A DNA stretch of 64,000 nucleotides from Botryllus schlosseri (Eukaryota). The translations under genes were made by a program, and so were the position numbers. The notes below the pieces were generated by a model. That model ran no database searches, was not told where the DNA came from, and worked only from the letters and a program-made list of their open reading frames with translations. The DNA is taken from assembly GCA_051294905.1 (NCBI GenBank), contig CM119378.1:21080001-21144000 (forward strand), given 5' to 3'. Shown here piece by piece: positions 8,929-48,200 of this stretch. How positions within the stretch are numbered: position 1 is the stretch's first letter; each line of letters opens with the position of its first letter.

Positions 8929-9790
8929 TTATGAATATGCTACAGTACATCTTTCAGGCAATAAATTTACCTTTGGCAGAGCTCTCATTTTGAGTTGCTT
9001 TCTGGGTTTCAGCTGAATGATATCACTATATAAATTAAACATGGAACGGCAACGACCAATTTTGCAGCTTCGTTCCGCTTCGCTGAGGCTGGAGTGGAGA
9101 ATTGTTTTGCGTAAGCGACTGTAGGATTTCTGGCAATCCAAAAGCTATCTTCCCGAGCGCAGAAATTATTGAATCTGGTATAGATCGAACGCTACTGTGG
9201 CTCCGATTCTGAAAATATAAATAAAAATATTGATCAGGCACTGATCCACCTAGAATCTGTCCTCCAATCTGAAATAAATATCGGCATTGTTCAGAACAAT
9301 CTGGTGACCGCAACACAATGGCCATAACAATCAAACGTTGCGATTCTCCGATTGTTCGAACAATGCCGATATTTCTGACTTGGAGGACGGTTTCTAGGTG
9401 GATCAATGCCTGATCATTATTTTAATCCGTATTTTCGGAATCGGTGCAACAGTAGCTTTCGATCAAGACCAGATTCAGTAATTTCTGCGCTCGGGAAGAT
9501 AGCTTTTGGATTGCCAGAAATCCTACAGTCGCTTACGCAAAACAATTCTCCACTCCAGCCTCGGCGAAGCGGAACGAAGCTGCAAAATCGGTCGTTGCCG
9601 TTTCATGCTTAATTTCTATAATATCACACTCCTCAAAATGATTCTAGCGGACCACGCCTCTATTGTAAATTACTCTGTTAATTCGGTTGAGGTTGAGACG
9701 GCTGCTAGCTTAGGTCTCCGTATGGAGCAACGTATTGATACGCGGGTTATTCACAAAGCTACATCCAGGGATAGCGCAGTTGTTGACCAT
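8929..9790 (-). pseudogene. THAP zinc-finger coding remnant interrupted by a foldback element
   Basis: Seen: minus strand from ATG 9790 reads MVNNCAIPGC...GVVR*NHFEECDI and continues in frame IQLKPRKQLKMRALPKV once 9027-9620 and one TSD copy are removed; two in-frame stops. Knowledge: C-x4-C...HF...(AVP-like) layout of THAP domains. Confidence 0.7.
9027..9620. mobile_element. Foldback element with about 270-bp inverted arms
   Basis: Seen: 9027-9301 is a near reverse complement of 9350-9620 around a 48-bp spacer; 7-bp TSD ATATCAC (9020-9026, 9621-9627). Confidence 0.9.
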
Positions 9791-10661
9791 AATTGCAGGG
9801 GCGGTTCTATTATTTTTATCTGCGTAAGACGCGAAATGTTCAACGGGATATAAGTCAATGCGATGTTGCCTAGTGGACAGAAAGGAAGATGTCAAAACGA
9901 ATAAGTACAATCTTCCAATGTAACATTCACCTCGGCCTAATGCCCGATGAAACAGTGTACGATATTGATCTTTTGGAGGTGATAATATTTTCTTTGCTCT
10001 TTTTCATTCGCTTTCCGTTTTTTCATCGGTTGCGTATGCACAGAAAATAGTTTGGGCAGCTCTGTATCGGTATCATCGGCTTTTAATGGCCACTCAATTA
10101 TTACGGCATAAAGCCCTATCAATTATAGCATTGTCTACGAGTTTACGGGATCCAAACGTAAATAGTCGGCCGTGGAGAACTTATCGCTGAATAAGGCATT
10201 GCGGGGAAGTGATTTCAGACGTGTTCTGGGTCGAGGACAGTTGTGAATATTTTTTAGTGAGAACGTATTGATGCTTCCTCGTAACAAGCAAAATTTTAAA
10301 TGTCTACCTCGAATATCTGCACCCTTTTTCGACGGTCAAATTCGTCCATGTATTTCCGAAATAGCCTATACTTTTACACGTAAAATAGGAACAATCGGAC
10401 TTTCGCGAACGGAATTTTACTACGCAAAGTCAAGCGTGACGGATCTAAACTGAGAACGATGAGTCGTCGCTCCATCCTACAATCTCTATAGTGTAACGTA
10501 GTTCTCTTCCTAGCTGGTGAAATTACTTTCTTCTCGCAGGCTTGGTGATGATAAAGTATATGTATAACTGTACTTGTAACTTTCCAAAAACGATTCCGCT
10601 CAAGTCAACAACACGAACCCATCACAAAAAGATGCCATCGTTACCTTTCAAGCTATAGTAA

Positions 10662-11050
10662 CCATGACTGCCTTTAGCGCCACATGAAATACGTCGAAAT
10701 TATATGCCTTAACAGACCGTGGCGAGATAGTGCAGTGGTATAATCCGCGGCTACAGCACCAATGGGTGCGGGTTCGAGCCCGACCGAGGTCGAATTCCGA
10801 AGTCCGGCACCCAAGTGTTGGAGGTTTACCCAGGCTCCTCCTCGCCACCTCATCCGCGTCAGCGGTGTCTTACAAAAGCCTAGAGGTGGGCCGTGCTCTA
10901 AGTCGGCAGTTTCGGAAATAAGAAGAATATCGGCCTGGTGTAAATGACCATAGTAGTCGACCAACACCATAAATACCCCAAAACAAACAAACCCACAAAC
11001 CGTGACTACCTTTAGCGCCACATGAAATACGTCGAAGTTATAGGCTCTAA
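10662..11050. repeat. About 50-bp direct repeat flanking SINE copy 1
   Basis: Seen: CC(A/G)TGACT(G/A)CCTTTAGCGCCACATGAAATACGTCGAA(A/G)TTATA... at 10662-10712 and 11000-11050. Confidence 0.85.
10716..10999 (+). mobile_element. tRNA-derived SINE, copy 1
   Basis: Seen: head GTGGCGAGATAGTGCAGTGG (A box) ...GGTTCGAGCCC (B box), a body shared with 33551-33857, and a (CAAA)n-like tail. Confidence 0.82.
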
Positions 11051-11215
11051 ATTCATCAACACGGTATTCTCGGTATTATTCTCGCAATTCCGGTAGACAT
11101 GGACATATTCATACTTTCAATCGCATCTAAGAAGAACTCGCAGGGCTTATATTGGAGATAATAAGACCCTGGTGTAATTTTGCATGCTGACTTGAAGGTG
11201 ACAGCTTGTCATATA

Positions 11216-11474
11216 TGTGAAAACCCAGTATTTGACATCTTGATATTTTCCGGTTGTAAAATTTTTGGTGAAACTTTCCGCGCGCTTTCCTTTGTTAGTC
11301 GGTCGACGGGATTGGTCTGGGGTTGGAGTGAGCACTGAGTACGGTAGTAAGTTGCTGCTTTTTAATTAAATGTTACTAAGATAATACGACTGGAGTCTGT
11401 GGCTGCATAAAGCGCAAATCTGCAGTATATGAAGGAATCGGACTATTGAACCAGACCAGGAAAGGGACGCTACA
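11216..11474 (+). repeat. 5' LTR (259 bp, TG...CA)
   Basis: Seen: starts TGTGAAAACC, ends GGACGCTACA just before the PBS; first 192 bp identical by eye to 14544-14735. Confidence 0.93.
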
Positions 11475-11478
11475 AATT

Positions 11479-11493
11479 TGGCGAGCACGCCAG
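11479..11493 (+). promoter_or_regulatory. Primer-binding site, probably tRNA-Arg
   Basis: Seen: TGGCGAGCACGCCAG 4 nt after the 5' LTR. Knowledge: the tRNA-Arg(ACG) 3' end gives TGGCGAGCCAGCCAG (13/15 match). Confidence 0.75.
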
Positions 11494-11550
11494 AACATAC
11501 TGTACTGATTTGTGCTATTGGAACAACGGCGACGCTGCGGTACCGAAAGG

Positions 11551-12855
11551 ATGACAAAAACCAGAAGTAGAAAGACCCAGCGCGAATCTATTGAGAAGCA
11601 TGAGGCAAACGATCGGGAAAGTGAAGTACAATATTCTGCCTTCGTCAGTAGAGCAGTGGGGGAATTGAAGGAATATCTAAACAGAAAGATTGCACTACAG
11701 GAAGAAAGGCTGTTAAAAACGGAAGCTCAACTAAGTAATAGAATTGATGGTCTTGAACAAGGACTAGCCGAGATTATGACTTTTATTCAGACGGTAACCG
11801 GCGCTACACTGCCAGCTCAACCTGCCGCTGCGACTACTGAACGTGAGTCGGTTGAGCAAGAACAGGAAATTGTGACCTCGTCAGAGCCGGTTGTTGAAAA
11901 ATTCCCGGAACCAGTCAGTCCGTCATCAGGAAAGTCAGCCGTAAGTGATGGTATTTCTATGTCGAGAAATTTAGCCCCAGTCATGGAGCAACATTTGACC
12001 AATAATTCTGGTCGTTATAGACCTAAACGGCCTCAACCGTTTGACGGAACTAGCTCTTGGAATAGTTATATATGCCATTTTGAAGCGGTGGCCGAGTATA
12101 ACAGATGGGATGACTATGAAAAGGGCTACGAATTAGCAACTTGTATGCTAGGGCAAGCTCTTGACTTACTCTCTGAACTAGCACCGTCAGATCGGAACAA
12201 CTATGCGATAGTCGTGGCGCATATGCAGAATTTCTTCAATCCCACTGGGGGAGAAATGGCCTACCGGGCAATGTTTGACAATAGGGTACGGAACAATGCC
12301 GAAACTCCCATGGAGTATGGAGCCGCTTTAAAGTTACTGGCAACAAAAGCATTTCCATCGCTGGATTTGCCTGGGCGGGACGTGATGTTGAAGACGCAGT
12401 TTTTCAGGGGAATTGCTGACAACGAAATGCGCAAGCTTGTTGCCATGCAGCAGCCGAAGTCATTAGAAGATGCAATAGCACTCGCCACTCAATACTATTA
12501 CCTCGACGCTATGGACAATACTGTTAAGAGAGAGGGCAAGCCGCGTGCTGGCATCGCTTCTGTGACTAGGAACGAATGTCATTCGTCGTCGGATGAGCCG
12601 ATTCCCAAGATGGATGATACTCTGAGTGAGCTCAAGGATTTGCTGCTGAAGCTGGTACAACAGAATACGCCGACCAAACCTTGTCCGCTATGTAAACAGC
12701 ATGGTCATTGGGCCAGGCAATGCCCAAATGTACCGCCAGGAGCTCGCCGTTGCTTCAACTGTCGTGAAGAAGGGCACATGAGGAGGGACTGCCCAACACT
12801 CGGTGTTACAATGCCGAACGACCCTGTATCAAAAAACGCGATGCAGCAGGCATGA
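11551..12855 (+). CDS. gag: Retrotransposon Gag (coiled coil, capsid, two CCHC zinc knuckles), 434 aa
   Basis: Seen: intact ORF from ATG 11551; PQPFDGTSSWNSYICHFEAVAEYNRW capsid-type segment; CPLCKQHGHWARQC and CFNCREEGHMRRDC. Confidence 0.93.
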   Translation: MTKTRSRKTQRESIEKHEANDRESEVQYSAFVSRAVGELKEYLNRKIALQEERLLKTEAQLSNRIDGLEQGLAEIMTFIQTVTGATLPAQPAAATTERESVEQEQEIVTSSEPVVEKFPEPVSPSSGKSAVSDGISMSRNLAPVMEQHLTNNSGRYRPKRPQPFDGTSSWNSYICHFEAVAEYNRWDDYEKGYELATCMLGQALDLLSELAPSDRNNYAIVVAHMQNFFNPTGGEMAYRAMFDNRVRNNAETPMEYGAALKLLATKAFPSLDLPGRDVMLKTQFFRGIADNEMRKLVAMQQPKSLEDAIALATQYYYLDAMDNTVKREGKPRAGIASVTRNECHSSSDEPIPKMDDTLSELKDLLLKLVQQNTPTKPCPLCKQHGHWARQCPNVPPGARRCFNCREEGHMRRDCPTLGVTMPNDPVSKNAMQQA

Positions 12856-12872
12856 GGTCCTCATCGCCTGCT
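12831..12872 (+). promoter_or_regulatory. -1 programmed ribosomal frameshift signal
   Basis: Seen: A AAA AAC heptamer in Gag phase (12831-12837), 7-nt spacer, hairpin AGCAGGC-ATGAG[GTC]CTCAT-C-GCCTGCT (12845-12872); the -1 frame is open into the protease ORF. Confidence 0.85.
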
Positions 12873-14264
12873 ACTGCGATTGTTGATGATGAAAAGAAAA
12901 TGGACCTGTTTTTGAGACCATGGATTTCAGCTATCCAGTGGGAAGATAGCTGGTATGCTAAAATTGAGGTGAATACTCAATCGATATGGTTTATGGTGGA
13001 TAGTGGCGCTGGTACGACATTACTAGATAAATCACTTCTAGAATCGATTGGTAGTGTTCTGAATCCGTGTACGCGTTCGTTCGATGCGGTGGGAGGATAC
13101 CCACTGGACATCTCTGGTACCGTGAAAGTGGAGCTCAATGTTGGCTTGGTGGCGGCTCGACAGACGGTGGTTGTAGCGGATTTGGGTGTGCCAATCGGAC
13201 TTCTTGGAATGGACTTTTTGAAGAGTCATGAGTGTGTCATGCATCTCTCTTCCGGAATACTGGACGTCGCAGGAGAAGAAGTGAAACTCACCAGTCATGA
13301 CAGGGTACCTTTCTGCCAGGTGATCATTGACGACGATGTTGAAATTCCACTGCTGCACGAGAAAAATACTCCGTTTAAAACAGAAAGAAGAGAAAGTTCT
13401 GATTCACAGCACAAAAGTAGGCATACGGGACAGCCAGTAAAGAGAGCGTCGTCTGAAGGAGGGTCCCCGGTGCTGGGGAGGAGAGGCTCATTGCGACGGA
13501 CACCGAAAACCGGCTCCTGCGAAGAAATGAAAATTGTAGCTGCAATGTTTGACAGCAAGGAAACTCCTGGCGATACAAAGGCAGAGAACCCGTGTTGCAC
13601 CCGACGTAGATCCGGGGCCAATTCTGCGATAATGGGCATTCCGAGAGAGAGTCTGAGAAGACGCAAGAGCAGGGTCCTGCTCTGGTCCGACGTTGTCAAG
13701 AAGAATGCGAAGAAAAAGACAAAACCCGCTAATGTAAATGTCCAGCGTCAGAAACCTGCCAAAATCGATCGTAGATTTGTTGGAACGACTCCGAAGCAGC
13801 AATCCTTGTCGCATCATGTGAACTCGCCTGTGACGATGTACATTGGGAAACGAGCAAAATCCAGGAGATTGAAAGTGACCGTTGTCGATTGGCCGACCAA
13901 TCAGCTCAATTCTGGTATGAGTTCGGGTACCATTACCTCCGGGGGTAAGATAATTGAAGGCCAGCCTACCCAGAGTGAGGTGGCAGTCAAACGAAAGACT
14001 CGAGGTAGTAAGATTGTAGAAAAACGCGTTGCTCCAAAACCCACAGTCGTCGAACCCCAGAAAGTGGGTGAGAAAAGACGAAGTAAGACGGAAACTGCAG
14101 TGGGAGAAGAACCGAAGAAAATGAGATCACAGAAAACTGCAGATGCAGAAACGAAATTTCGTTGTCGGAGTAACCCCAGTAATAATAGAGAATACAGCCA
14201 AACGTTGGTGAAAAAAAAAGAACCTGGTTTTACGTGTCGTCAACTTGCGACATTGCTTGCGTGA
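12852..14264 (+). CDS. Retropepsin aspartic protease fused to a Lys/Arg/Ser/Thr-rich tail of about 300 aa
   Basis: Seen: FMVDSGAGTTLL catalytic motif and GLLGMDFL segment; stop-free to 14264; -1 frame relative to gag, with an ATGA overlap at 12852-12855. Confidence 0.88.
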   Translation: MRSSSPATAIVDDEKKMDLFLRPWISAIQWEDSWYAKIEVNTQSIWFMVDSGAGTTLLDKSLLESIGSVLNPCTRSFDAVGGYPLDISGTVKVELNVGLVAARQTVVVADLGVPIGLLGMDFLKSHECVMHLSSGILDVAGEEVKLTSHDRVPFCQVIIDDDVEIPLLHEKNTPFKTERRESSDSQHKSRHTGQPVKRASSEGGSPVLGRRGSLRRTPKTGSCEEMKIVAAMFDSKETPGDTKAENPCCTRRRSGANSAIMGIPRESLRRRKSRVLLWSDVVKKNAKKKTKPANVNVQRQKPAKIDRRFVGTTPKQQSLSHHVNSPVTMYIGKRAKSRRLKVTVVDWPTNQLNSGMSSGTITSGGKIIEGQPTQSEVAVKRKTRGSKIVEKRVAPKPTVVEPQKVGEKRRSKTETAVGEEPKKMRSQKTADAETKFRCRSNPSNNREYSQTLVKKKEPGFTCRQLATLLA

Positions 14265-14532
14265 GGCTGACCTCGCGCAACCTTGATGAAGAAATCCGAT
14301 CCGGAGGTCGAAGGTTAGAATGTAGATGTTGAGATGCCTGATACTTCCCGCGGGGATGCAGACTTCGAATCTTGTCAGTGACGTCGTCCCGTTAACTTGA
14401 ACGATTTCTATTTGATGCCCTAAGCATTTAGCTCTTGTTTAGTATGTTTATGTTGTTGCTTCTTTCTTGCAAACTCCGTTCGCTCGACCATATTGATTTC
14501 GATTGCTATTAAGAGAATCTCCATCAAAGATA

Positions 14533-14543
14533 CGAGGGGGTAG
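14533..14543 (+). promoter_or_regulatory. Polypurine tract
   Basis: Seen: CGAGGGGGTAG immediately before the TG of the 3' LTR. Confidence 0.8.
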
Positions 14544-14735
14544 TGTGAAAACCCAGTATTTGACATCTTGATATTTTCCGGTTGTAAAATTTTTGGTGAA
14601 ACTTTCCGCGCGCTTTCCTTTGTTAGTCGGTCGACGGGATTGGTCTGGGGTTGGAGTGAGCACTGAGTACGGTAGTAAGTTGCTGCTTTTTAATTAAATG
14701 TTACTAAGATAATACGACTGGAGTCTGTGGCTGCA
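14544..14735 (+). repeat. 3' LTR, lacking the last 67 bp
   Basis: Seen: identical by eye to 11216-11407, then diverges abruptly after GGCTGCA. Confidence 0.93.
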
Positions 14736-15043
14736 CTTTAACAGCCCAGTACACGAAAGAAACCGGTACCGGTACAAGGCACAGGAAATGCGTAGACTAT
14801 ATTATTACCAATAGACAATCCCATCGGTCATTTATTAGCAACGTTGTTTAATTTCTACAGCCAATATAGCGAGTATCTCGTAAGCGTATCAAGATCATTG
14901 AGATATTTCTTGTTTTAGATCAGTGGTTCTAAACCGACAGTCAGGAGACCGCAGTGACTCTTCTGCCAGCCCGCCGGATATTTTGTTATAATATATTTTA
15001 ATTGCAAAATACATGATGTTGACGGCTTGTCACTTGATAAAAG

Positions 15044-15168
15044 AATTGAACAGTTTATTCATATTGAAATGAACCCGAATATTTTCGGCTGACACTCGTC
15101 AGGGGTAATCGTCAGCAACTAGTACAGAATTGGAAAGAACATTGTATATCAACAATCGTATCACAAAA
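15044..15168. repeat. About 125-bp dispersed repeat (inverted copy at 49734-49859; degenerate copy 49963-50073)
   Basis: Seen: about 5 differences by eye between 15044-15168 and the reverse complement of 49734-49859; no TIR or TSD. Confidence 0.85.
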
Positions 15169-16449
15169 TATGACGTCACCAGCATGAAATTTTGTGAATG
15201 AGAGAGCGTTCAATGTACTATTTTTAGGTGGTATACGAACTCTTTTTGTTGACAGAGTTTTGGTCGGTGTATTTTGATAAAAGTCGACTCCAAGGCACAC
15301 AAATGGATTTGTGAACGGCCTCGCCCACCGATTCGAAATCGGTCGTCTCGATAATTATTCGCGCACATCGGATTATCAAACAGATGTTTGCCGATGGCAG
15401 AATTAATGGCCTTTGATCGATCAGCATCAATCTTAAGCGGATAAAAGAAGTAAAACATCAAATTCAAAACTGATTTAGAACTTCTCCAGTCCTGCAATTT
15501 ATAGAGGTGTGACGCAACATTATACCTGGTAACATGTTCGATTTGATTTGAAGTTCATACCGTATATCCGGTGACGACAAGTAAGCGACAACTATGAGCT
15601 GACTCCCTGAATCAAGCAGTTTACAAGATCATTCGTTAAAGCTGTTTTGTGGGTCGGCGGTAGTCGCTGTAGCAGGCGTTTGCGTGCGGCACATTGTATT
15701 CGTACTACGAATGTCGTAGTACGTCTGGTGGTAGTAGGAAATAAGCAAGGCATATCACGATTCCCGACAAGGTGTTTGATACGACTCCGAAACTCTTCAC
15801 CTCTCGATATTGTCGACGAGAATAATAATATTCGAGTTATAGTGTAGTCGGTTTATCAGGATTGTAACCAAGTCACATGGTTCCGAGCCACGAGTCAATC
15901 TTACTTTTGTGGTTTTGACTCGAGTCAAGTCGAGTCATTTTCAATTCAACACCGAGTCGAGTCCGAGTCCAAGTCACTGTTTACCGGGTCAAGTCCGAGT
16001 CATAGTGTTATGACTCGAGTCCGAGTCCAAGTCACAGTATTGAAGTGATATTCATCCAATGTTTTCAATCTTGCTTGGGTGATATCGAATTCCTTGCTTG
16101 CCTAACATGCTTATTTTGTCTCTACCAGAGTCTTGGCACATGTTTATTTAGGTGGATTACGGACAGTTCCTGGCCTCATTTACCGATGCTACAGATAGAC
16201 GAGACAGGCCGCCAATATGATAACTTTACTAATCTTAGAATCCAAAATCAAATGTCTGTCTCGTCAGTCTTATACATCACAAATACAAGCATTCAGTTTT
16301 TATTACGACCACATCGAAGACAGTTCACAAATAGCTGATTGAGAACCTACGAATTCACGTCGACAAATAAGGTGATAGAGAATCAACAGATGCGTGTTTA
16401 TGTAGGGGTATTTTCACCAGACCAGCATGCGGTAAAAGCGTGCATGTAG

Positions 16450-19545: not shown

Positions 19546-20728
19546 CAGTGGTTCTCAACCTTTTTGACCTCGCAGCACACTTTGAAAATGAAAATTAGTT
19601 CGCGGCACACTAGCACAGTGGTTCTGAACTCTTTTGGCTTACGGCACAGGCAAACTATAAAAATGCGTATAGCAGCAACCATAGTCTTACAGAGGTGGTC
19701 ACTGACGAAGTACTTCTACCTTTTCGGAGCACTCAAGTAGGCTGTTTTTTTTCTGCTTGAGTTTTCTTTTATCTCTGTGGAGATCTCACAAATTGTAACT
19801 GATATAATTTGATCAACTTTACTTCTCAATTCTCATATTTGTCGCCTGCAACATCTTAACAATCGCAATGTGAATGGCTATGTTGGCAATTGTAATTTGT
19901 AAACGTGAACGTGAACATCACTTCCAAATTAGTTCATTTCTCGATGGTGAGAATGCCTTCCTAGGTGTTGGAGGATTATTTAGGCTCCTGCTCGTCCTCC
20001 GATCTGCAAAAGCAGTGTCTTAGAAAAAGTGGGCCGTGCTATAAGTTGGTATCTCAGGAATCAAAATTAGGAATATCAGTATGGTGTAAAATGATCATCG
20101 ATGACGAAGACATGACTACAAATAGACACAGAAAAAGGTCATCAACCTGCGTCATGACCCTGTTCTGCCTCGGGTTCTGATGGGTGACAAGTAAAAGGTG
20201 AACACTTCGGCCACACCTCAATATCACGGTCCGATTGCCCGAGTTTAGCTATCACCGTCCTAAATGCTACTGTGTGCGGGCAAACTAGCGTATCACACCC
20301 ACTGACGGCGGAGGCACCAGTTTGATTCATGGCAGTGCTGTAGCAAGTTACGAAGCGTCGCAGATTTATTAGATTATCCGCCCCTATACGTGGCTGTGCT
20401 CATAGCGTCTTTACAATAAAGGGCCCAGAGAAAGACCCAATCCATGACCTAATGGGGATGTCAGATTGAGATACTAGATTGAGATACCGTAACTACGGTC
20501 GCCTCGACATCCTTATATCTGTTCACGGCATCGGATTGTCTGTTCACTGCATCGGATTGTGCATCACAAGTCTTGACCGGGTAAATTCAATAGAAAAACC
20601 AACGATGACACACTCAAAATCTGGATTTTTGTTATACTTCGACATAGTTTGCTACATTTGCTCGCGGCACACCCGAGCAGTCCGATTGGCACACTAGTGT
20701 GTCGCGGCACACCGGTTGGGAACAACTG
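19546..20728. mobile_element. Non-autonomous hAT (Buster/Charlie-like) element
   Basis: Seen: CAGTGGTTCTCAACC...GGTTGGGAACAACTG, GCGGCACAC repeats, exact TSD CCCTATAG (19538-19545, 20729-20736). Confidence 0.9.
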
Positions 20729-27200: not shown

Positions 27201-30200
27201 TGATTTTCGATCGCATTTCCGCCGCTAGGATGCGGTATTACATTCTCAGCACTTGGTGGGAGTATTGAGTTCGATGTCATCCCGATGTGTTCGTTTGCGC
27301 GGGAAATTCCAGCGGGCGGTGAAATCGTCGTCCCTCCTCTACCTGAAGTAATTTTGATAAAAGAGAGCCGACCTGTACAACTAAATAATTCTAATTATAA
27401 TAATTACAACGAAGTGACGGCACACCAATAATAATTATACATTATTATAATTTATGAAATGCTTCCATGTTCTCATTTGAATTACTACGTAATTTCCGGT
27501 TTTCCTGAAAGTGCTTCCGGAGAACTGCAGGGTGAAACGAGTCAGGCTTAGCGCTCACTGTACAGACAATTTTCCTTCTCATGATTGTGAGATTAAGCTT
27601 TGATTTGATATGGATTGAACTTATCTTTTGTTGTTTCTTTCAAATTCATAATATAATTTAATCTTAAAGTGTTTGCGAATTCAGTAATTCTAATTCTACC
27701 ATTAATCCATTTTGAAAAACACTCGGAGCAATAATTCTTATTGTAATCAATTTGGAAAAGATAAAAATATTCTAATGGTTCAGCTCTGAGAGAGAGTGCA
27801 GTGCGTCTTAGCGAAATGGCGACGAGACTAACCCGAATAATCGTGCGGCGGGTTGCCGTTAGCGTCCTTGCAAAATCTGACTTCTATGTCGCTGTTGCTG
27901 CAGTCTATCTCACACGTTGACTGCGGCGTCAAGGGGTCGGACGTTGATGGGTGAGTTGATACTGATGGGATTGGAAATGAGGTTGATAAAGGCTGTGCGT
28001 AACCTGGAAATATAAAAACAGTCCGTCTGCGATGGCGATACAATAGTAAAAGTCCGAGTTTGAATATCTGGAAAGAGGCGTCGCGGGAGTCAGCGGGCTT
28101 TGTTGATGCCAGAGGCAAAAATATTAAATAACGAAGAAATATTATAGCCTAATTACAACACCACATCAGAGTCAACCTATTTTAGGTAAAAGTTACGAAA
28201 TCGTACGACATATTATTACACTGTACAAAATTTCAGCAAGGGGGCATAGTAAAAGGCAGCGTTCGGGTACCTAAATACAATACTAACGCCCCAAACTACC
28301 CTAGATCATCGGAGTCGTGACGTCACGTCGTGCAGTATACTATAATGTACAATAGGATATTCTTCATCTTCAGAGTTACAGGTACGCTCATAGCAGCAGA
28401 TACAAATTCCGAGTGTAACTTACCCGGGTTAGGCGAATATGGCGACATCAGATGGTGCCGGTGTCCATAACTATAACTGGCCCTGCTCCGAGCTCTCACG
28501 TTCTGTAACTGCACCACGGGCGGACTAGGGTGATACTGTTGTCGTGACGGGGCAGGCTGCATAGCCCGCGACTGCTCCGCGGAGTACGAATATCGCGTGC
28601 GCGGCCGCGAGCCGTGAGTCCTGTGATAGCCCGGGTTTTGATACGACAAATCGTGTCTGTCGTTCGATTCCGGAGAGCGCTGACTCGACAGAGCGTCTTC
28701 CACTCTGGCGTGAGAAGAGTAGGTTTGATTGTGAAGGTCTCGCCTTGCGTTTGGAGACTTGTAGGTGGATCGTTGTTCGTATGTCAATGACCGTGACTTA
28801 GCCCCGTATGAACGATCGTGTTTTGCAGGTGACCTAGACGGCGGACGCCTTACGGGACTAGGATCATCGTCTGGGTTATATTCCACTGTCCGTCGCGCTA
28901 TAACTCTATTGGGAGACACATCAGGAGAGGAATAATAGTCTTTAGGCGAAGACGCGTGCGCCGGGTGGATACGACGCGTTGACGCGTCGACGGAAGCGTC
29001 ACGGTTTGTTACGTCACATATGTCGTCGTGAGAAGATGCGAATCTCTCTCGTCTGCTATAGGCGAGGGCAGACTTGGCAGGACTTGATTCGGCGATAGGC
29101 CGACTTTTAGGCGTACGCTTTAAAGTGCCGACCACAGCGAAAACGGGGCTTTCTGAGCTGTCGCTGGCAAGCCCGCCAAATGACTCTTTTCTGTCGGAAT
29201 TGCTGGACTTGTGGCTTTTGCGCTTCATGACAATCATGCGACGTTGCTGACCGGCGCCTTCACCGTCGATTTTGCGGCTGTACAATCGTATCCTGGGCTT
29301 GCCGTCGGTGTCGAATGATGAAGTGAGATTGGCCCGTTCAGGATGTGACGGCATGACCCGTTCCGGGGAGGTAGAGGCGGACCGCGTCCCACCGCGCAAT
29401 CGCAAGTCTTTGTGAACTGTCAATGAAAATAGTTACACACGGCAAAGTATAAAGACCAGAAGTTTAATGCTGCATACTGCATACTTAGAGACATTGCTAA
29501 AATATAATTACGGGAAAGCAACATTTAACAACGAACCTGCGTCACGGATGCGCAGTGACACGATCAAAGAACGTTGCTAGGGCTAATTTAAAAAGTGTGC
29601 GAATGGTATATATATGCAGAAAAAGTTTCAACTAACATTGGTTGGAAGGGATGCATTTTGTTTTGAACAATGAAGAGATGGGTATTAATGATGTGACGAA
29701 TGAAGTGGACATCAAAAATTTTGGAACGCATATCAGAGAGCAACTAACAGTGAAGAGCATCCTCAGGCGAGGGTAAACGAATTGTGAACAAAAACTCACA
29801 TCTTTGCTGGGTTTGATCGGCGAATGACCGTCTCTTGTATAGCTCCAGCAGAACCTGTGGGGTGATTTCTCTCCTTTTACGAACGGACGACCTGAAATAA
29901 TAGGTTTCGACTAAAATATTTCTCATTCACCCCTACATTTTCAGGATATTATCTGTTGGTGGGATACCTTACCTCTATCATCTTTCAAGATATTCAGAGT
30001 TGGTCAAAATAGTCTGCGTTGGTACTCAAGTAGAGGTAATACAAGAAATTTCTACTCAATTACAAGTACAAGTAACAATTTCCCAAGACATTTCAAAACT
30101 ACTTCAAGTGAAAGATAAGAAAAGTACTCAAGTTAGTGGTTCAAACACGTAGTGGTCGAAGGGGTGCATACCTTTAGCATTTGATATATACTGGCTATAA

Positions 30201-33200: not shown

Positions 33201-36200
33201 TTTTGAAACCTGCATTTCATTTGTATCGTAGATTTTGCACAATCGGTGAACTTATCGGTTGACATTTTACAGCTTGTAGCCTACTTTATAGGCCTACCGT
33301 TGCAGACAGGGCATTGTCTGCTCATTGTGAATCATAAACACTGTCAAATGAAACAAATAGGTTGACACGGTGTTACGCTCAACGTACCGCAATATCCTAA
33401 GTGAAGCAAGACTGCATGGCTCTTTGCATCTTTATGAAAATTGAGATGTACACCATTGTCAGAATGAAGCAACACGGTGTAGGCTATCACCAGCAGTGTA
33501 CGCTCGCACAACTTCAGTGTTGTCAGCCAACAGCTGCTACAACTGAACGTTCTTTCTTCATTCTTCTTGTTTTTTGTATATTCATGGTGTTTGTCGACTA
33601 CAATGGTCATTTACACCAGGCCAATATTCCTTATTTTCGATTCCGTATCAGCCGAGTAGGCTATCTGCCAATTTGTAGCTCGGCTCACTTCTATGCTTTT
33701 TGTAAGACACCGCTTACACGGATGAAATGGCGAGGGGGAACCTAGATAAACCTTCAACACTTGGGTAGGAATTCTGGAGTCGACCTCGGTCGGACTAGAA
33801 CCCACTACCCATTGGTGTTGTCGCTGTGAATTATCCCACTATACGCTATCTCGCCACATCTCCATTCTTGGCAAGCTACCTAGTAAAGACAGACACTTTT
33901 TACCCGAGAATCAGTGATATCTAGAACTAGATATCTAGATATACCGCCGAGAATGTGGAATAGTATCTTTCGTTGTACTACAACAAATTTTAATTATTTT
34001 CACCATAGTACGTCATGTACTGGAATTCATCATAGGGCCTGATTTTGTTAAAACAATATTTTGTCATGTAAAAATTTGTCAATTTTTGAGTCAAAAAAGT
34101 TTTTTCAGGTAAAACTACTTCGTAAGGGTAGACAGTTCAAACCAGAAATGAGGATAAGTAGTACAATTCTAACATTTTTTGGGAAAACACCTAATTTGCA
34201 TACGTTAGGTCAAAATTTGGTCAAAATTTAGTTTTTTAAGGTCAAAAAATGTCAAAATTTAGATTTTTTAGGTCAAAATCTTTCATTTTTTAGGTCAAAA
34301 AAAAATCGCCCTACCTATCACCATTCGTGTTTTACTATGCTGATTGCCAATCCTATATCAGAAAATAAAGCCTATAAATCCCTAAAGTGACTTTTCTAGT
34401 TGGTGTAGCCTATTCATAAAATATATAGTACGTTCTATACTGTACACTACCAGAGATTGAATGGTCAGTTTACCGGATATCAGTGCTGATATCCAACCAG
34501 ATATATGCAGTCATAAAGACTGACACTAAATATATATCAGTCTACCACCACTCAGGTTTACGCAGCAACCCTATAATACCGTCGCATGAACAAATAACGT
34601 ATACTCCTGAATTGACATACAGTCGACCGAGATGATCGTGGTATCTATTTGCCTTCTAGCAACCATTTTAAGGCGCATGGAAACACAATAAAGACAAAAC
34701 AACAAGGCTTCAGCACACGTTGTTTTACAACTGGCACAATCCTCACCTTACAGAAGATTAAATACAACCCTCATCGACATGCTCGCTAAACAGCAAATGT
34801 CAAATATAGTGCAAACCCTTTCCATACCTGCGGTCGAGTACGATACCGGATTGCTGGGCCGGCTGTAGTCGCTCGCGGTAGCCGTCAAAGCTCGAAACTC
34901 ATAATCCACATCGCGGTAAAGCTGATCTGATTTGATAACGACGGCTGTGACGTTTTCGTACGTGTTGGTCAGCGTGTTCCAAGCTTCCTTCTCCGGCATA
35001 GGCTCGTGAGCATCTCTCTTTGTACGCTTGATCTCGGACGATGCTGAATAGCGAGATCGATACTAGCCATGTACGAAATTACCAGTCTTATATTAAAGCA
35101 GTGCAGTATTGATTTTGGGGTCAGAAAGTCGCGAACTCAAATGACTTCTTGTTCCTCGAGTCGGTATCAATTGTATACTGTAAATACGTGGGAGTAAACT
35201 GGTGTATTTATCGGATTTCTATCCATAGTCCCAGTCAGGACATGACATTGTCTAGTAGCAAAATATGGTACCAGAAAGTGCTGTTCACCTAATTCGCACG
35301 AAAAGCCATGGTGAAAATCAACGAAATGTACGATTTTCGTTCACAGTGTATTACGTACTATTATATTATGCAGCACTGGAAAGATTCACAGTCTTTCCTC
35401 GTTGCTCGAGTGTTACTCAAATGATACTCAAAAGCATGGACTAGATTTCTACAATCGGATACGTGTTGTTACGTCTGATGCACAGCAGATAATTGTCATC
35501 GTAGCATGATACTGGGGCCAAATGATCACAAATCGCGACGGAAAACGTTGCTCTACGACTTTACAGGTATGGTAGCATTTATTATGCTCAAGTTTCTGTA
35601 AGGTGTCTGATTCCACTTTATCACTTCGACACTGCTTATCAGAAGTACCTTGTCATCGTATATAGAATGCATTGCTGTACTTACAATATACACGAACTGC
35701 TTGTAACAGTGCATTGCGCACAATAGGTGGACGAAATAGCTCAAGTATTACGGACACAAAAGTTAATTTCAAAAGCGCACATCAGTAAGAATCATTTCGA
35801 AATGATGAATTCTATCGCTTTCACGATTACGTCGCTGGCTGCAGGTAGTAGCCTAAATGGCAATTATATATTGTTTCGACTTCATTTTGAAATTCACTTC
35901 AGTTTTTTCAAATCATTCATTCGTGCTGTTCTACAGTATAGTTTTCAAATGATGTAGGATGTGCAAATTCGATTTTTGATGGAGCATAATTTCAGAGCAA
36001 CAGGTGAATGACTACTGTGACATATTTCAATTCAACTTCAGCGTGGACAAATATTGACCTAGCTAATAATAATTGCAAATCACTGGTATTTACGTAAAAT
36101 CCGGGGTAGAATCTATCTTTAGTAGAATATTTGAACCATAACCACGGAATACACCCCAGCAATATATAATTATGAACAAACGAATCACAACACCTAGTAA

Positions 36201-45200: not shown

Positions 45201-48200
45201 GGATCAATTTCACAGAGCATGCACCAGGAGAAATTGCATTACCAGAGAAATTTGATACCACATTGATGATTGATGCCAGTTCAATTATATTTGATAATGC
45301 GTATCTAACTAATGCCTTTGGGACGGTCTACATCACAATATACGGACGATAATAACAACTCGCATAAATTACGTAATGTATCAGCCGTATACACAGGGTT
45401 GCCATCGACATGGATCCAAAAATAAGGACAGTCCAAAAATTAGTTTAGCATGAAAAAGTGTTTTTGTACATACTTTGTATTTATACGAGTCGTGGCATAT
45501 CACATTCCATAGTTTTCACCAGAAACAATCTGCTCCAGCAACTCCTTGTTATTAAAAGTGCTTCATGGATCTCACGACAGCTTAGGTCTAGGTTTACCTT
45601 TACTCAGGGCCGATACAGCACTTCCATCAGCCCCCCCACCACCCCCCCTTAGGGTGATAAACCAAACTTCTTCACCTCGTTAGAGGCGTAAACCAAGGCG
45701 GAAAAAGGCCATACACCACGCTTAGACCAACTCATTTTTGAGCGTATGGAGCAAAAACTCCAGTAACAATGCTTCTAGTCTTGGTCCTGGCCAAAGAAAA
45801 CTTACTTGCAATGTTGGAATCGGGGAATATTGCTTTGGACAATTGCGATGTGCAATCGTCGGTGGGGAATGATTGCTGGTGCCCTCGGGGGGCGATTTGG
45901 ATTTCGACGGGGGCGCAAATGCTCACGGGCGATATAGGGGGGGGCGCTGGGCTCAGGGGGCGGTATGGGGGCGCTGAAGAAAAATGGCCTCGCAGTAGAT
46001 GGTGTAGTAAGGAAATATGGTTATACAGTATATATTATATTCCAACCGGTACAAGCGAAGGTGTTTGAGTTTTTTATCAATAATTCTGGGATTACTCCCC
46101 GTCCAGGCTCTTTTTGCATATACACATGTTTCAACTGCAATAACTTCGCTTCTACTGATTGAAAGCTAGCAGAAATGGTTATGCGTCGTTCTTTTAGGCA
46201 ACTTAACGATTTCATGGGGTTGACAATAAAATTTGAAATTTATATTTTTATAATTTATTCAAAAATTTAAACAAGCTCTGCGGCCGCTTCTACTTGTTGA
46301 AATTGAGCCATATTTGTTGTGCAGCGTTTTTTAGGCAACCTAACAATTTAATCAGTGAATCCCTGGAATCCTAAAAAAAATTACATTAAAGATGCTTTGA
46401 AGCTTTTTGGCCAAAATCTTCAACTGAATATACTTTAGAGCAGTGGTTCCCAACCTTTTTCGGTGGCAGGGCCAAATTTAGAATTTCAGGGAACGGCCGG
46501 GGCCGCACGAATACCAAGGCAAGAAGGAACCCAAAATAGTCACTAAAATGTGAAAATTGGCATTGTTCCGATCATTCGCTTGGCGCCATTGGCCATTGTG
46601 TTGCCGCGCTCCCGTTGTTCAGAACAATCAACCTTTGCTGGTTATTTCGGAGTAGTTTTATTGCCCTGGCGAGATTTCAAATCGTATTTTTGGAATCAGT
46701 GCGACACTTGCTTCCAATAAACACTGACATATCAAATTATTCGGACGCTTGGGTCGCGAGCTATAGGACTACCAATTATGCTGCTTTTTGCCAGCTAAGC
46801 AGTACGCATCTCGGCGTATTGAATTGTGAGGCACTTGTTGCACATCTATCCGTAAATTAGTTATCAATACCCAGTGCCGTAACAGCACTTCGTCAGCCCC
46901 CCCCCTCCAAAAAAAACTTTCTCTTGGGCCCCCCCATAGGGTGATAAACAGAATTTCGAAGCCCCCAGACCCCCTCACGCTAGATGGGTGTTTACCGCTA
47001 TTTATCATCTAAATCGGGTGTCCGTATAGGCATCTTCTCGCGACTAATCGCGCGAAGCGCGAAAAGATTCTATAATTCATGATCGAATCGGTCAATATAA
47101 TCGGGAATTTCATATATATTGGTATCCATTTTTATCCTCTCTCTGCTCACGTAATCAGATTGACCGGTTGAGCCGAGTGAGTTGTGTTTGAAAAGGTAGG
47201 ACCAATCAATAATAAATAAGCCTCTTCGGGCGCATACCCGTTGGCAGGAACGAAACAGCACTTCGTCAGGCCCCCCAAAACACTTAGGTCTTGAGTTCCC
47301 ATAGGGTGATAAACCGAACCCCCGTGCCGTTGTTCGCTTCTGCCACGAAATCAGGATCCCCGTTTAACGAGCCAGCGTGGAGCGCGAAAATCTTCGATAA
47401 TTCAAAATAAAATAGGTCAATAAGATCGGGAATTGCATATATATTGCTATCAATTGCTTATCCCCTCTGCTCGCGTAATAAGATTTACCGGTAGAGCTGA
47501 GTGAGGTGTCTTGGAAACTGTAGGGTCCGTAAATAATAATTAAACATATTTGGACGGGCGGACCCGTTGGTACGACTGCGTTACATGATGTTATTTGTTA
47601 TTTCGTGACCTCCAGTCTGCTATATCAAGAAATATAGAATCGCCCAAACATACTAAACTAAAAGATGCACACGATTTCAAATTGGTAGTTCTTCACTGGC
47701 ATATAATTCTTCCCTGCGGGATGGTAGCCTATTTGTCTCGTGACGTTCAGATTGCCAAGACAGGAACATTCGGCGCTAGTCATTCAGGCGCCTAGAAGTT
47801 TTCGGTCAGCGTAAGGGCAGTCCTTTTCGGCCAAGGTTTTCTCGCTGCCGATCGTTCTGGCACACTTCTTGGAGTCGCATGTTACATGGCCTAAAACTTT
47901 ATATGTCTTCGCGCGTCGTGGCACGGTAATGGCCAACGCCGATATGCCCACTTCTATAAATCTTGCGTATTTTATCTTGGTCGAAGAGTACCCAAAAATT
48001 AAGGTACTTGGAAACTTGAAATCGCGCGCAGCGCGAAAAATCTTTGAAAAAGTTGCATAAAATTTCATAAAATACTCTATAATTTATACTAATTCACAAA
48101 ATAATTTTAGGTCCCATTCGAGCTCGCTCCCCCCAATTGGGGGGCTTTGGGCGCGGCAGTTACGGTCCTGTCAATACCTATATCTATACCTATATCTATA

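What the first reader, a model, noticed from the sequence alone, without database searches (positions are those of the whole stretch)
11216..14735. Young LTR element encoding Gag and protease but no RT, RNase H or integrase: a candidate capsid-making satellite retroelement
Seen: the LTRs are identical by eye over 192 bp; PBS, PPT, a 434-aa Gag with two CCHC knuckles and a 470-codon second ORF are all intact, yet no RT/RH/IN motif exists between the LTRs. Knowledge: Ty3/Gypsy elements need Pol; Gag-only non-autonomous families are known in plants (TR-GAG), but most deletion derivatives decay. Inference: this could be a propagating lineage that builds and matures its own particles while borrowing RT/IN from a helper element, or a fresh one-off in-frame deletion.
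Basis: partly seen in the sequence, partly recalled or inferred. Interest (0 to 1): 0.78.

Follow-up and report, generated by a model that had tools for sequence, protein, structure and literature searches.

The report
Gag–protease LTR retrotransposon lacking polymerase
This is a very young copy of a Ty3/gypsy-type jumping gene that still encodes its shell protein and protease. Its reverse transcriptase and integrase have been replaced by a 300-residue basic tail of unknown origin, and a second, decayed copy in an unrelated public dataset shows the same structure, so it is a lasting parasite-of-a-parasite lineage of a kind already known in plants.

Summary
Two 192-nt direct repeats are 100% identical. 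They bracket an intact 434-aa Gag with two CCHC knuckles and a 470-codon ORF2 in the -1 frame. ORF2 has a retropepsin domain and no RT, RNase H or integrase.

New findings:
- A conserved -1 frameshift signal (A_AAA_AAC plus stem-loop) links gag to ORF2.
- Homology to a canonical Ty3/gypsy relative (Logan contig L001, PR followed by RT) stops at ORF2 residue 166.
- The remaining 304 residues are a basic (net +42) orphan tail. It had one hit among 1.84 billion proteins.
- That hit lies on contig L002. L002 carries the same PR-end/tail junction, tail and 3' UTR at about 70-74% DNA identity, with its tail frame broken.

So the junction is old and shared. It is neither a fresh deletion nor an assembly collapse.

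The tail frame shows weak purifying selection (dN/dS 0.51, against a neutral null of 0.81).

Caveats:
- There is no target-site duplication.
- No TGG primer-binding site abuts the 192-nt repeat. A conserved ACA/spacer/TGG-PBS block 57-72 nt further in suggests the 3' LTR is truncated.
- Copy number, the helper element and the host are unknown.

Gag+protease-only LTR families are documented in plants. I rate this a new variant of a known kind, of moderate interest.

The parts
11216..11407 (+). 5' LTR, the part shared with the 3' LTR (192 nt, starts TGTG, ends TGCA). It contains an ATTAAA at 11365-11370 followed by a GT-rich stretch.
   Evidence: 100% identical to 14544-14735. Only two copies in the window. 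The poly(A)-signal reading is inference from the sequence.
11408..11474 (+). Either the start of the leader (LTR = 192 nt), or, as I favour, the rest of U5 of a 259-nt LTR ending ...GCTACA that is missing from the 3' copy.
   Evidence: The block GGGACGCTACAAAT (11464-11477) is exactly conserved in relative L001, although overall nucleotide identity is 55%. No copy of this stretch exists elsewhere in the window.
11480..11497 (+). Putative tRNA primer-binding site TGGCGAGCACGCCAGAAC. It can also fold as a small hairpin (TGGCG-AGCA-CGCCA).
   Evidence: 17 nt are exactly conserved with L001, separated from the ACA block by a spacer of variable length. It is enclosed by a stem with 2 compensatory pairs. 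The window leader fold has z = -3.6. The tRNA identity was not testable.
11551..12855 (+). gag ORF (434 aa plus stop): N-terminal long helix, helical capsid-like core around aa 160-330, and two CCHC zinc knuckles (nt 12682-12723 and 12751-12792).
   Evidence: ORF list. zf-CCHC match. 44% identity over 97% of its length to Gag P0001. Weak capsid-like signals only: Ty3_capsid E 0.18, and Foldseek top hits to the PEG10 CA C-terminal domain at E 0.14 on a low-confidence model.
12831..12837 (+). -1 ribosomal frameshift slippery heptamer A_AAA_AAC, in register with the gag frame, 5 codons before the gag stop.
   Evidence: Read from the sequence. The same heptamer is in register in L001 at 1404-1410. 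This region is the second most conserved 30-nt window between the two elements.
12843..12877 (+). Stem-loop 5 nt downstream of the slippery site, the likely frameshift stimulator. It contains the gag stop and the ORF2 ATG.
   Evidence: RNA folds of the window and L001 give the same stem, GCAGGCAUGAGG / CCUCAU-GCCUGC (L001 z = -4.25). There is no covariation because the stem sequence is nearly identical in both.
12852..14264 (+). ORF2 (470 codons plus stop), open in the -1 frame from 12831. It is probably made as a Gag-PR-tail fusion.
12924..13349 (+). Retropepsin (aspartyl protease) domain and its C-terminal extension. The active-site D50-S-G is at 12999-13007.
   Evidence: Pfam gag-asp_proteas and Asp_protease_2. 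48% identity without gaps to the PR of L001. PDB hits to Ddi1 and retroviral-like aspartic protease.
13350..14261 (+). Orphan basic tail (304 aa, pI 10.8, net charge +42, 69% disorder-promoting residues). It occupies the place of RT-RNase H-integrase.
   Evidence: No Pfam family. One hit in 1.84 billion representatives. Homologous to L002. Open frame 0/20,000 shuffles. dN/dS 0.51. Composition.
14265..14543 (+). 3' untranslated region ending in a polypurine-like tract (14526-14543, core GAGGGGG).
   Evidence: Sequence. Aligns to L002 with 23% differences, as conserved as the tail.
14544..14735 (+). 3' LTR. It is complete if the LTR is 192 nt, or truncated by about 67 nt of U5 if the LTR runs to 11474. 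No TSD follows it.

Best explanation
The element is a young copy of a persistent, non-autonomous Ty3/gypsy (Metaviridae-type) LTR retrotransposon lineage. Its RNA encodes Gag. Through a conserved -1 frameshift (A_AAA_AAC plus stem-loop) it also encodes a Gag-protease fusion that continues into a 304-residue, highly basic, probably disordered tail where RT, RNase H and integrase normally sit.

Shown:
- the anatomy;
- the loss of pol enzymes;
- the age and sharing of the PR/tail junction;
- weak purifying selection and frame maintenance on the tail;
- conserved cis elements (leader/PBS block, frameshift signal).

Inferred:
- The element packages its own RNA in its own Gag particles and processes them with its own protease.
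- It relies on RT and IN supplied in trans by a related autonomous element that recognises its PBS, PPT and LTR ends.
- The tail rides into particles at Gag-Pol-like stoichiometry. It may act as a nucleic-acid-binding or nuclear-import module, or merely keep the ORF long.

This particular copy has non-canonical ends. Most likely its 3' LTR lost the last 67 nt or so of U5 together with the TSD. That would still leave it able to make a full genomic RNA.
For: - LTRs are 192/192 identical.
- Gag and PR are intact and 44-48% identical to a relative whose pol frame runs PR then RT. That relative's RT is closest to Ty3 RT.
- Homology to that relative stops at ORF2 aa 166.
- There is no RT/RH/IN in any frame or elsewhere in the window.
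- The slippery heptamer and stem-loop are conserved in both elements.
- The tail's only relative, P0002, lies on L002. L002 aligns to window 13302-13938 at 73.6% and to 13993-14513 at 68.9%, spanning PR end, the same junction, tail, stop and 3' UTR.
- Nine of 12 indels in the coding part have lengths that are not a multiple of three, and L002's frame is broken where the window's is not.
- Neutral simulation keeps the tail open in only 1.6% of runs at 0.13 substitutions per site.
- dN/dS is 0.51 (CI 0.37-0.72). Out-of-frame controls give 0.91 and 0.79, and the neutral null is 0.81 +/- 0.15, P about 0.008.
- Third codon positions differ most: 19%, 23% and 28% for positions 1, 2 and 3, P = 0.03.
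Against: - Only one copy is in the window, and the source genome could not be searched, so copy number is unknown.
- No TSD.
- No canonical PBS abuts the 192-nt repeat.
- No helper element was found.
- The closest RT-bearing relative is only 44-48% identical in protein, too distant to be called the partner.
- The selection signal on the tail is modest and rests on one pairwise comparison with a decayed copy of unknown species.
- Capsid fold evidence is weak.
- The ORF2 structure model is uninformative (pLDDT 35.6).
Confidence: 0.62

Rival explanations
1. A fresh one-off internal deletion of a full-length element, a dead-end copy with no lineage of its own.
For: Only one copy in the 64-kb window. 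Identical LTRs fit a very recent event. No TSD.
Against: L002, from an unrelated public run, has the same junction and tail at about 26-31% nucleotide divergence, so the junction long predates this copy. The tail is not recognisable pol sequence. An in-frame 304-codon non-pol tail is not what a simple deletion gives.
Confidence: 0.05
2. An assembly artefact: collapse across the PR/tail junction, or a chimeric join at the 3' LTR.
For: Missing TSD and unmatched flanks. The 3' repeat stops 67 nt short of the conserved ACA/PBS block.
Against: The internal junction is reproduced in an independent assembly. The window contains no N. Both ORFs are intact. A chimeric join at the 3' LTR remains possible, but it concerns only the flank and would itself imply at least two copies.
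Confidence: 0.08
3. A family that exists but is no longer mobile. The tail is junk that happens to be open, and this copy arose by non-integrase insertion or by ectopic recombination or deletion, with no functional Gag-PR-tail product.
For: No TSD. dN/dS is only moderately below 1. The 3' UTR is as conserved as the tail. The tail is low in complexity and prone to indels.
Against: Frame maintenance over 304 codons against a diverged, broken relative. The in-frame dN/dS is lower than both out-of-frame controls and the neutral null. Gag, PR, the frameshift signal and the leader block are all intact. Identical LTRs are the signature of recent reverse transcription.
Confidence: 0.2
4. A host gene domesticated from a retrotransposon (PEG10-like Gag-PR with a -1 frameshift), not a mobile element.
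For: It has the same coding architecture as PEG10: Gag, -1 frameshift, protease, then a non-enzymatic C-terminal region (established knowledge). Foldseek top hits are the PEG10 CA C-terminal domain, but at E 0.14.
Against: It is flanked by identical LTRs with a PPT and a PBS-like block. Its only tail relative is a decayed copy. No orthologue-like intact proteins were found in 1.84-5.8 billion sequences.
Confidence: 0.03

Closest known systems
ATHILA gag+protease-only non-autonomous deletion derivative (Arabidopsis thaliana and A. lyrata; PMC11735389)
   Same: A Ty3/gypsy LTR element that keeps only gag and protease, lacks RT, RNase H and integrase, and persists as its own abundant lineage.
   Different: It is a plant element with hundreds of copies documented. 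Here only two copies are known, the host is unidentified, gag and PR are linked by a -1 frameshift, and PR is fused to a 304-aa orphan basic tail under weak constraint.
Wheat Fatima subfamilies RLC_famc1.4 and 1.5 (gag and protease ORFs only), proposed to complement RLC_famc1.1, which carries RT and INT (PMC6097303)
   Same: Division of labour between subfamilies: some encode the structural protein and protease, another encodes RT and IN.
   Different: Fatima is Ty1/copia, in a plant, and its partner subfamily is identified. No partner is identified here.
TR-GAG elements and the GAG/PROT-only families of sugar beet (PMC13570524 and the references it cites)
   Same: Non-autonomous LTR retrotransposons retaining a gag (and sometimes PROT) ORF, described as 'semi-autonomous'.
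   Different: TR-GAG was defined in plants and by gag alone. The present element has an intact protease, a frameshift signal and an additional long ORF segment with no known homologue.
PEG10 (domesticated Ty3/gypsy Gag-PR gene of mammals; established knowledge)
   Same: Gag with a CCHC knuckle, a -1 frameshift into a retropepsin, and no RT/IN. The weak structural top hit is the PEG10 CA C-terminal domain.
   Different: PEG10 has no LTRs and is a fixed host gene. This element has identical LTRs and a decayed paralogue or relative, as a transposon does.
LARD and TRIM non-autonomous LTR elements (established knowledge; mosquito non-coding examples in PMC3286476)
   Same: They depend on a helper element's enzymes. 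They keep LTRs, PBS and PPT.
   Different: LARDs and TRIMs have no coding capacity. This element keeps two long intact ORFs.

Membership tests
Ty3/gypsy (Metaviridae-type) LTR retrotransposon | Two long terminal direct repeats with TG...CA ends | tested here: met
   192 nt, 100% identical, TG...CA
Ty3/gypsy (Metaviridae-type) LTR retrotransposon | tRNA primer-binding site directly after the 5' LTR | tested here: inconclusive
   No TGG follows the 192-nt repeat. A conserved TGG-type block lies at 11480-11497, 5 nt after a conserved ...ACA. This fits only if the LTR is 259 nt and the 3' copy is truncated. The tRNA identity was not testable: there are no tRNA genes in the window.
Ty3/gypsy (Metaviridae-type) LTR retrotransposon | Polypurine tract directly before the 3' LTR | tested here: met
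   AAAGATACGAGGGGGTAG at 14526-14543. This is a sequence reading only.
Ty3/gypsy (Metaviridae-type) LTR retrotransposon | Target-site duplication of 4-6 bp | tested here: not met
   Flanks are CATATA| and |CTTTAA. No match at any 4-6 bp register.
Ty3/gypsy (Metaviridae-type) LTR retrotransposon | Gag with a capsid-like domain and CCHC nucleocapsid | tested here: met
   Two zf-CCHC knuckles. The capsid part is supported only weakly, but it is 44% identical to the Gag of an element with Ty3-like RT.
Ty3/gypsy (Metaviridae-type) LTR retrotransposon | Pol with PR-RT-RH-IN in that order | tested here: not met
   Only PR is present. No RT/RH/IN. It is therefore a derivative, not an autonomous member.
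Non-autonomous gag(+protease) LTR retrotransposon (TR-GAG / GAG-PROT type) | LTR-bounded, intact gag ORF, no RT/RH/IN | tested here: met
Non-autonomous gag(+protease) LTR retrotransposon (TR-GAG / GAG-PROT type) | Several copies sharing the same internal structure (a family, not a single deletion) | tested here: inconclusive
   One further copy with the same junction was found (L002). The source genome could not be searched. The collections hold nothing closer.
Non-autonomous gag(+protease) LTR retrotransposon (TR-GAG / GAG-PROT type) | An autonomous partner sharing LTR ends and PBS | not testable with these tools
   None in the window. L001 shares the leader/PBS-like block and the frameshift signal, but it is only 44-48% identical in protein and its LTR was not sampled.
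LARD / TRIM | No protein-coding capacity between the LTRs | tested here: not met
   Two intact ORFs of 434 and 470 codons
Domesticated Gag-PR host gene (PEG10-like) | No LTRs; fixed single-copy orthologue under host selection | tested here: not met
   Identical LTRs flank it. The only tail relative is a decayed copy. Synteny was not testable.

The most novel reading that the evidence does not exclude
A long-lived animal-type 'satellite' retroelement lineage in which RT, RNase H and integrase have been replaced by a selected, orphan, strongly basic domain fused to the protease. This domain would be delivered into particles by frameshifting. It would actively serve the parasitism, for example by recruiting a helper's RT/IN, chaperoning nucleic acid, or importing the preintegration complex. 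It would not be inert filler.
Probability: 0.2. Interest if true: 0.7.

Novelty: new variant of a known kind. Interest (0 to 1): 0.45.

Why it matters
Non-autonomous LTR retrotransposons that keep gag and protease show how retroelement functions can be split between partners. The structural half must be made in cis. The enzymatic half can be borrowed.

Such families are documented in plants but are poorly described elsewhere. This case adds a clean, intact, very young example with a conserved frameshift signal. It also has a feature not reported for the plant families: a long orphan basic ORF segment in place of pol that has stayed open and shows weak purifying selection.

If the tail proves functional, it would be a tractable system for three questions:
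- what a Gag-Pol C-terminal region must contribute to assembly and packaging apart from catalysis;
- how satellites hijack helpers;
- how Gag-PR genes such as PEG10 may begin their path to domestication.

If copy number turns out to be one or two, it is an ordinary decaying derivative.

Tried and rejected
- Word-index protein searches with all of ORF2 and with PR plus junction found nothing. The first was swamped by low-complexity words, so it is a weak negative.
- Exact-sequence look-ups of Gag and ORF2 were not on record. The source genome's own ORFs are therefore absent from the collection, and genome copy number could not be measured.
- DNA pattern scans of JGI metagenomes and IMG/VR gave 0 hits with a tail block and with the frameshift block.
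- Gag-profile scans of viral and prokaryotic genome contigs gave no confirmed relative.
- P0001 and P0002 are singleton clusters.
- Searching papers for the two SRA run numbers and for the PBS string gave nothing. The organisms behind L001, L002 and the window remain unknown.
- Rfam and tRNA scans of the window found nothing.
- AlphaFold of ORF2 (single sequence) gave pLDDT 35.6 even over the protease, so it says nothing about the tail. The Gag model reached pLDDT 48.5 and Foldseek gave no hit at E <= 0.001.
- Self-priming (Tf1-like): the 18 nt after the 192-nt repeat have only a 7-nt complement inside the LTR, which I estimate as about chance level. I rejected it as evidence. This is my reading.
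- The tail is not related to Gag, to itself (no internal repeats), to the rest of the window, or to any frame of L001.
- The bacterial promoter/terminator scan is irrelevant here and found nothing.
- Pfam scans of 12 other window ORFs gave nothing that identifies the host.


Full report
**What is there.**
- The window has no N.
- Two direct repeats, 11216-11407 and 14544-14735, are 192 nt long and 100% identical. They begin TG and end CA and occur nowhere else in the 64 kb.
- Between them lie two long + strand ORFs.
- The first (ATG 11551, stop 12853-12855, 434 aa) has two CCHC zinc knuckles (Pfam zf-CCHC, E 1.9e-10). PDB sequence hits are to retroviral nucleocapsids and one Gag polyprotein.
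- The second (12852-14264, 470 codons) lies in the -1 frame. It has a retropepsin domain at aa 37-130 with D50-S-G (Pfam gag-asp_proteas 2.5e-09; Ddi1 and retroviral-like protease in PDB).
- Nothing between the repeats matches RT, RNase H or integrase. This holds for ORF2, its last 304 residues alone and the antisense ORFs.
- A tblastn with a relative's PR-RT fragment finds only the PR part in the whole window.
- With 0 differences in 192 nt, the 95% upper bound on LTR divergence is about 1.6% (arithmetic). The copy is young.

**A relative that shows what was lost.**
- The word search with Gag found one protein, P0001 (44% identity over 97% of its length). It lies on a 2,751-nt Logan contig (L001, run SRR23343704).
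- On L001 the -1 frame after gag encodes PR and then runs straight into RT (Pfam RVT_1). The best solved relatives of that RT are Ty3 RT and the Ty3 Gag-Pol polyprotein (E about 1e-26 to 1e-27).
- The window's ORF2 aligns to this pol without gaps at 48% identity up to ORF2 residue 166 (nt 13349). After that, similarity ends.
- The element is therefore a Ty3/gypsy derivative. Everything after the PR C-terminal extension has been replaced.

**Expression signal.**
- Five codons before the gag stop, in register with the gag frame, lies A_AAA_AAC (12831-12837). Five nt later there is a stem-loop (12843-12877) that includes the gag stop and the ORF2 ATG.
- L001 has the same heptamer in register (1404-1410) and the same stem (z = -4.25).
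- Overall nucleotide identity between the two elements is 55%. This region is the second most conserved 30-nt window in the comparison.
- I infer that ORF2 is made as a Gag-PR-tail fusion by -1 frameshifting. This is not shown experimentally, and the stem shows no covariation because it barely differs.

**The tail is real coding sequence, and it is an orphan.**
- The 304-codon frame (13350-14261) is stop-free. The other two + frames carry 15 and 19 stops.
- None of 20,000 dinucleotide shuffles was stop-free (14.5 stops expected).
- The product is strongly basic (69 K+R against 27 D+E, pI 10.8). It is 69% disorder-promoting residues, with several K/R clusters.
- It has no Pfam family and no similarity to Gag, to itself, to the rest of the window or to any frame of L001.
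- An exhaustive HMMER search of 1.84 billion representatives gave a single hit: P0002, 85 aa, E 8.7e-05.

**The decisive relative.**
- P0002 lies on a 1,534-nt Logan contig from another run (L002, SRR25569784).
- At the DNA level L002 aligns to window 13302-13938 (73.6%) and to 13993-14513 (68.9%).
- L002 begins in the end of PR (RVPFYQVTI..., compare the window's RVPFCQVII... and L001's VPTCQVTI...). It crosses the same junction (IPPLSEKNT against IPLLHEKNT). It continues through the tail to the same C-terminus (...CRQLATLLA, stop) and into the 3' UTR.
- No RT/RH/IN lies between. Pieces of its extra 284+58 nt have no Pfam family.
- In L002 the tail is spread over three frames with several stops. 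Nine of 12 indels in the coding part have lengths that are not a multiple of three.
- Hence the PR/tail junction is old and shared by at least two diverged copies in independent assemblies. This rules out an assembly collapse at the junction and a fresh one-off deletion.
- The window's own ORFs are not in the collection. L002 therefore probably comes from a different genome. That is inference.

**Selection on the tail.**
- In the window's frame the two copies differ at 19.1%, 23.2% and 28.1% of first, second and third codon positions. The 3' UTR differs at 23.1% (chi-square P = 0.03).
- Nei-Gojobori dN/dS over 272 tail codons is 0.51 (bootstrap 95% CI 0.37-0.72).
- The same statistic in the two wrong frames is 0.91 and 0.79. 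A neutral null with the observed distance and transition/transversion ratio gives 0.81 +/- 0.15. Of those null runs, 0.75% are as low as observed.
- Random substitution at 0.13 per site, half the observed distance, leaves the tail open in only 1.6% of simulations, indels ignored.
- Together these say the lineage leading to the window copy was selected to keep this frame, with weak constraint on the residues. That is typical of disordered regions.
- The result rests on one pairwise comparison, part of which is neutral decay on the L002 branch.

**The ends are not canonical.**
- There is no TSD. The flanks read CATATA| and |CTTTAA.
- The 18 nt after the 5' repeat do not begin with TGG.
- The most conserved stretch of the whole window-L001 comparison is non-coding. 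GGGACGCTACAAAT (11464-11477) and TTTGGCGAGCACGCCAG (11477-11493) are identical in both, split by a spacer that differs in length.
- This reads as a U5 end (...ACA), a 5-7 nt spacer and a TGG-type PBS (11480-11497).
- In both elements a stem pairs sequence upstream of this block with sequence just after it, with 2 compensatory pairs out of 7. This resembles a retroviral U5-leader stem.
- By the mechanism of reverse transcription (established knowledge), U5 must reach the PBS.
- I therefore favour, at roughly 60%, a true LTR of about 259 nt (11216-11474, TGT...ACA). On this reading the 3' copy lost its last 67 nt or so and the TSD, by deletion, by a non-integrase insertion or by a chimeric join.
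- The alternative is a 192-nt LTR with an unknown priming mode and a conserved leader hairpin.
- Either way, an ATTAAA (11365-11370) and a GT-rich stretch lie inside the shared 192 nt. The copy could thus still make a complete genomic RNA. That is inference.

**How it most likely works.**
- Shown: the anatomy, the loss of pol, the old shared junction, the maintained frame and the conserved cis blocks.
- Inferred: Gag, whose helical core gives only weak capsid-like signals, assembles particles around the element's own RNA.
- Inferred: a minority of ribosomes frameshift and add PR-tail. PR processes the particle.
- Inferred: RT and IN come from a related autonomous element that accepts the PBS, PPT and LTR ends.
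- The basic tail may bind nucleic acid, carry nuclear-import signals, dock helper proteins, or simply keep termination far downstream.
- No helper was found. L001 shares the cis blocks but is too distant to be named the partner.

**Comparison with what is known.**
- Gag+protease-only non-autonomous LTR lineages are documented in plants.
  - The abundant ATHILA derivative that keeps only gag and protease (PMC11735389).
  - Wheat Fatima subfamilies with gag and protease ORFs, proposed to complement an RT/INT subfamily (PMC6097303).
  - 28 GAG/PROT-only families in sugar beet, likened to TR-GAGs (PMC13570524).
- A mosquito survey describes non-autonomous LTR elements, but non-coding ones (PMC3286476).
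- The coding architecture also mirrors PEG10 (from knowledge). PEG10, however, has no LTRs.
- This is therefore a new variant of a known kind. The new elements are the frameshift-linked PR fused to a maintained orphan basic tail, and possibly the host group, which I could not identify.

**Limits.**
- The source genome, its reads and its tRNA set were not available.
- The collections hold only two relatives, both singletons.
- Metagenome, viral and prokaryotic scans were empty.
- L002's breaks are described only.

Noticed in passing
window 11464-11493 and L001 52-87: The best-conserved stretch between two elements that are only 55% identical overall is non-coding. It consists of two exact blocks (13 and 17 nt) split by a spacer of variable length, enclosed by a stem with two compensatory pairs. 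It looks like a U5 end plus PBS domain, and implies that the 3' LTR of the window copy is truncated.
   Followed up: partly
L002 about 640-985 and 1100-1160 (between window 13991/13992 and 14150/14151): The decayed relative carries about 284 and 58 extra nt inside the tail. They are also K/R/E-rich and include a short tandem peptide repeat (KKVSEAK twice). The tail region is prone to indels. The direction (insertion there or deletion here) is unknown.
   Followed up: partly
window 14236-14270: The last 9 codons of ORF2, its stop and the next few bases are almost identical to L002 (...CRQLATLLA, stop, GGCTGA) within an otherwise 70% identical region. This may be a conserved C-terminal peptide or a cis element.
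   Followed up: no
window 9027-9620: An inverted repeat with 241-nt arms, 92% complementary, separated by 112 nt. It is a foldback or MITE-like structure about 1.6 kb upstream of the element.
   Followed up: no
window 47320-48133 and 53821-54927: A set of collinear inverted-repeat pairs (80-234 nt pieces, 80-90% complementary) forming arms of about 0.8-1.1 kb around about 5.7 kb. This is possibly a DNA transposon with long terminal inverted repeats, or two inverted copies of one repeat.
   Followed up: no
window 15044-15193; 49734-49859; 49933-50073: A short interspersed repeat of about 126-150 nt. One copy lies 300 nt downstream of the element, with a 96% identical inverted copy and a 76% copy 35 kb away.
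   Followed up: no
window 10660-11050 and 33571-33857, 19965-20098: The 5' flank is itself repetitive. A 53-nt motif recurs at 338-nt spacing (89%), and a 290-nt stretch has 70-75% identical copies elsewhere in the window. The immediate flanks (11046-11215 and 14736-15043) are unique, so no empty-site paralogue was available.
   Followed up: partly
window 28323-29423 (- strand): A 366-codon ORF rich in S, R and P, in a local GC peak (0.476), with no Pfam family. It may be a host exon or another low-complexity ORF. A weak 22-aa similarity to the tail (E 0.36) looks compositional.
   Followed up: partly
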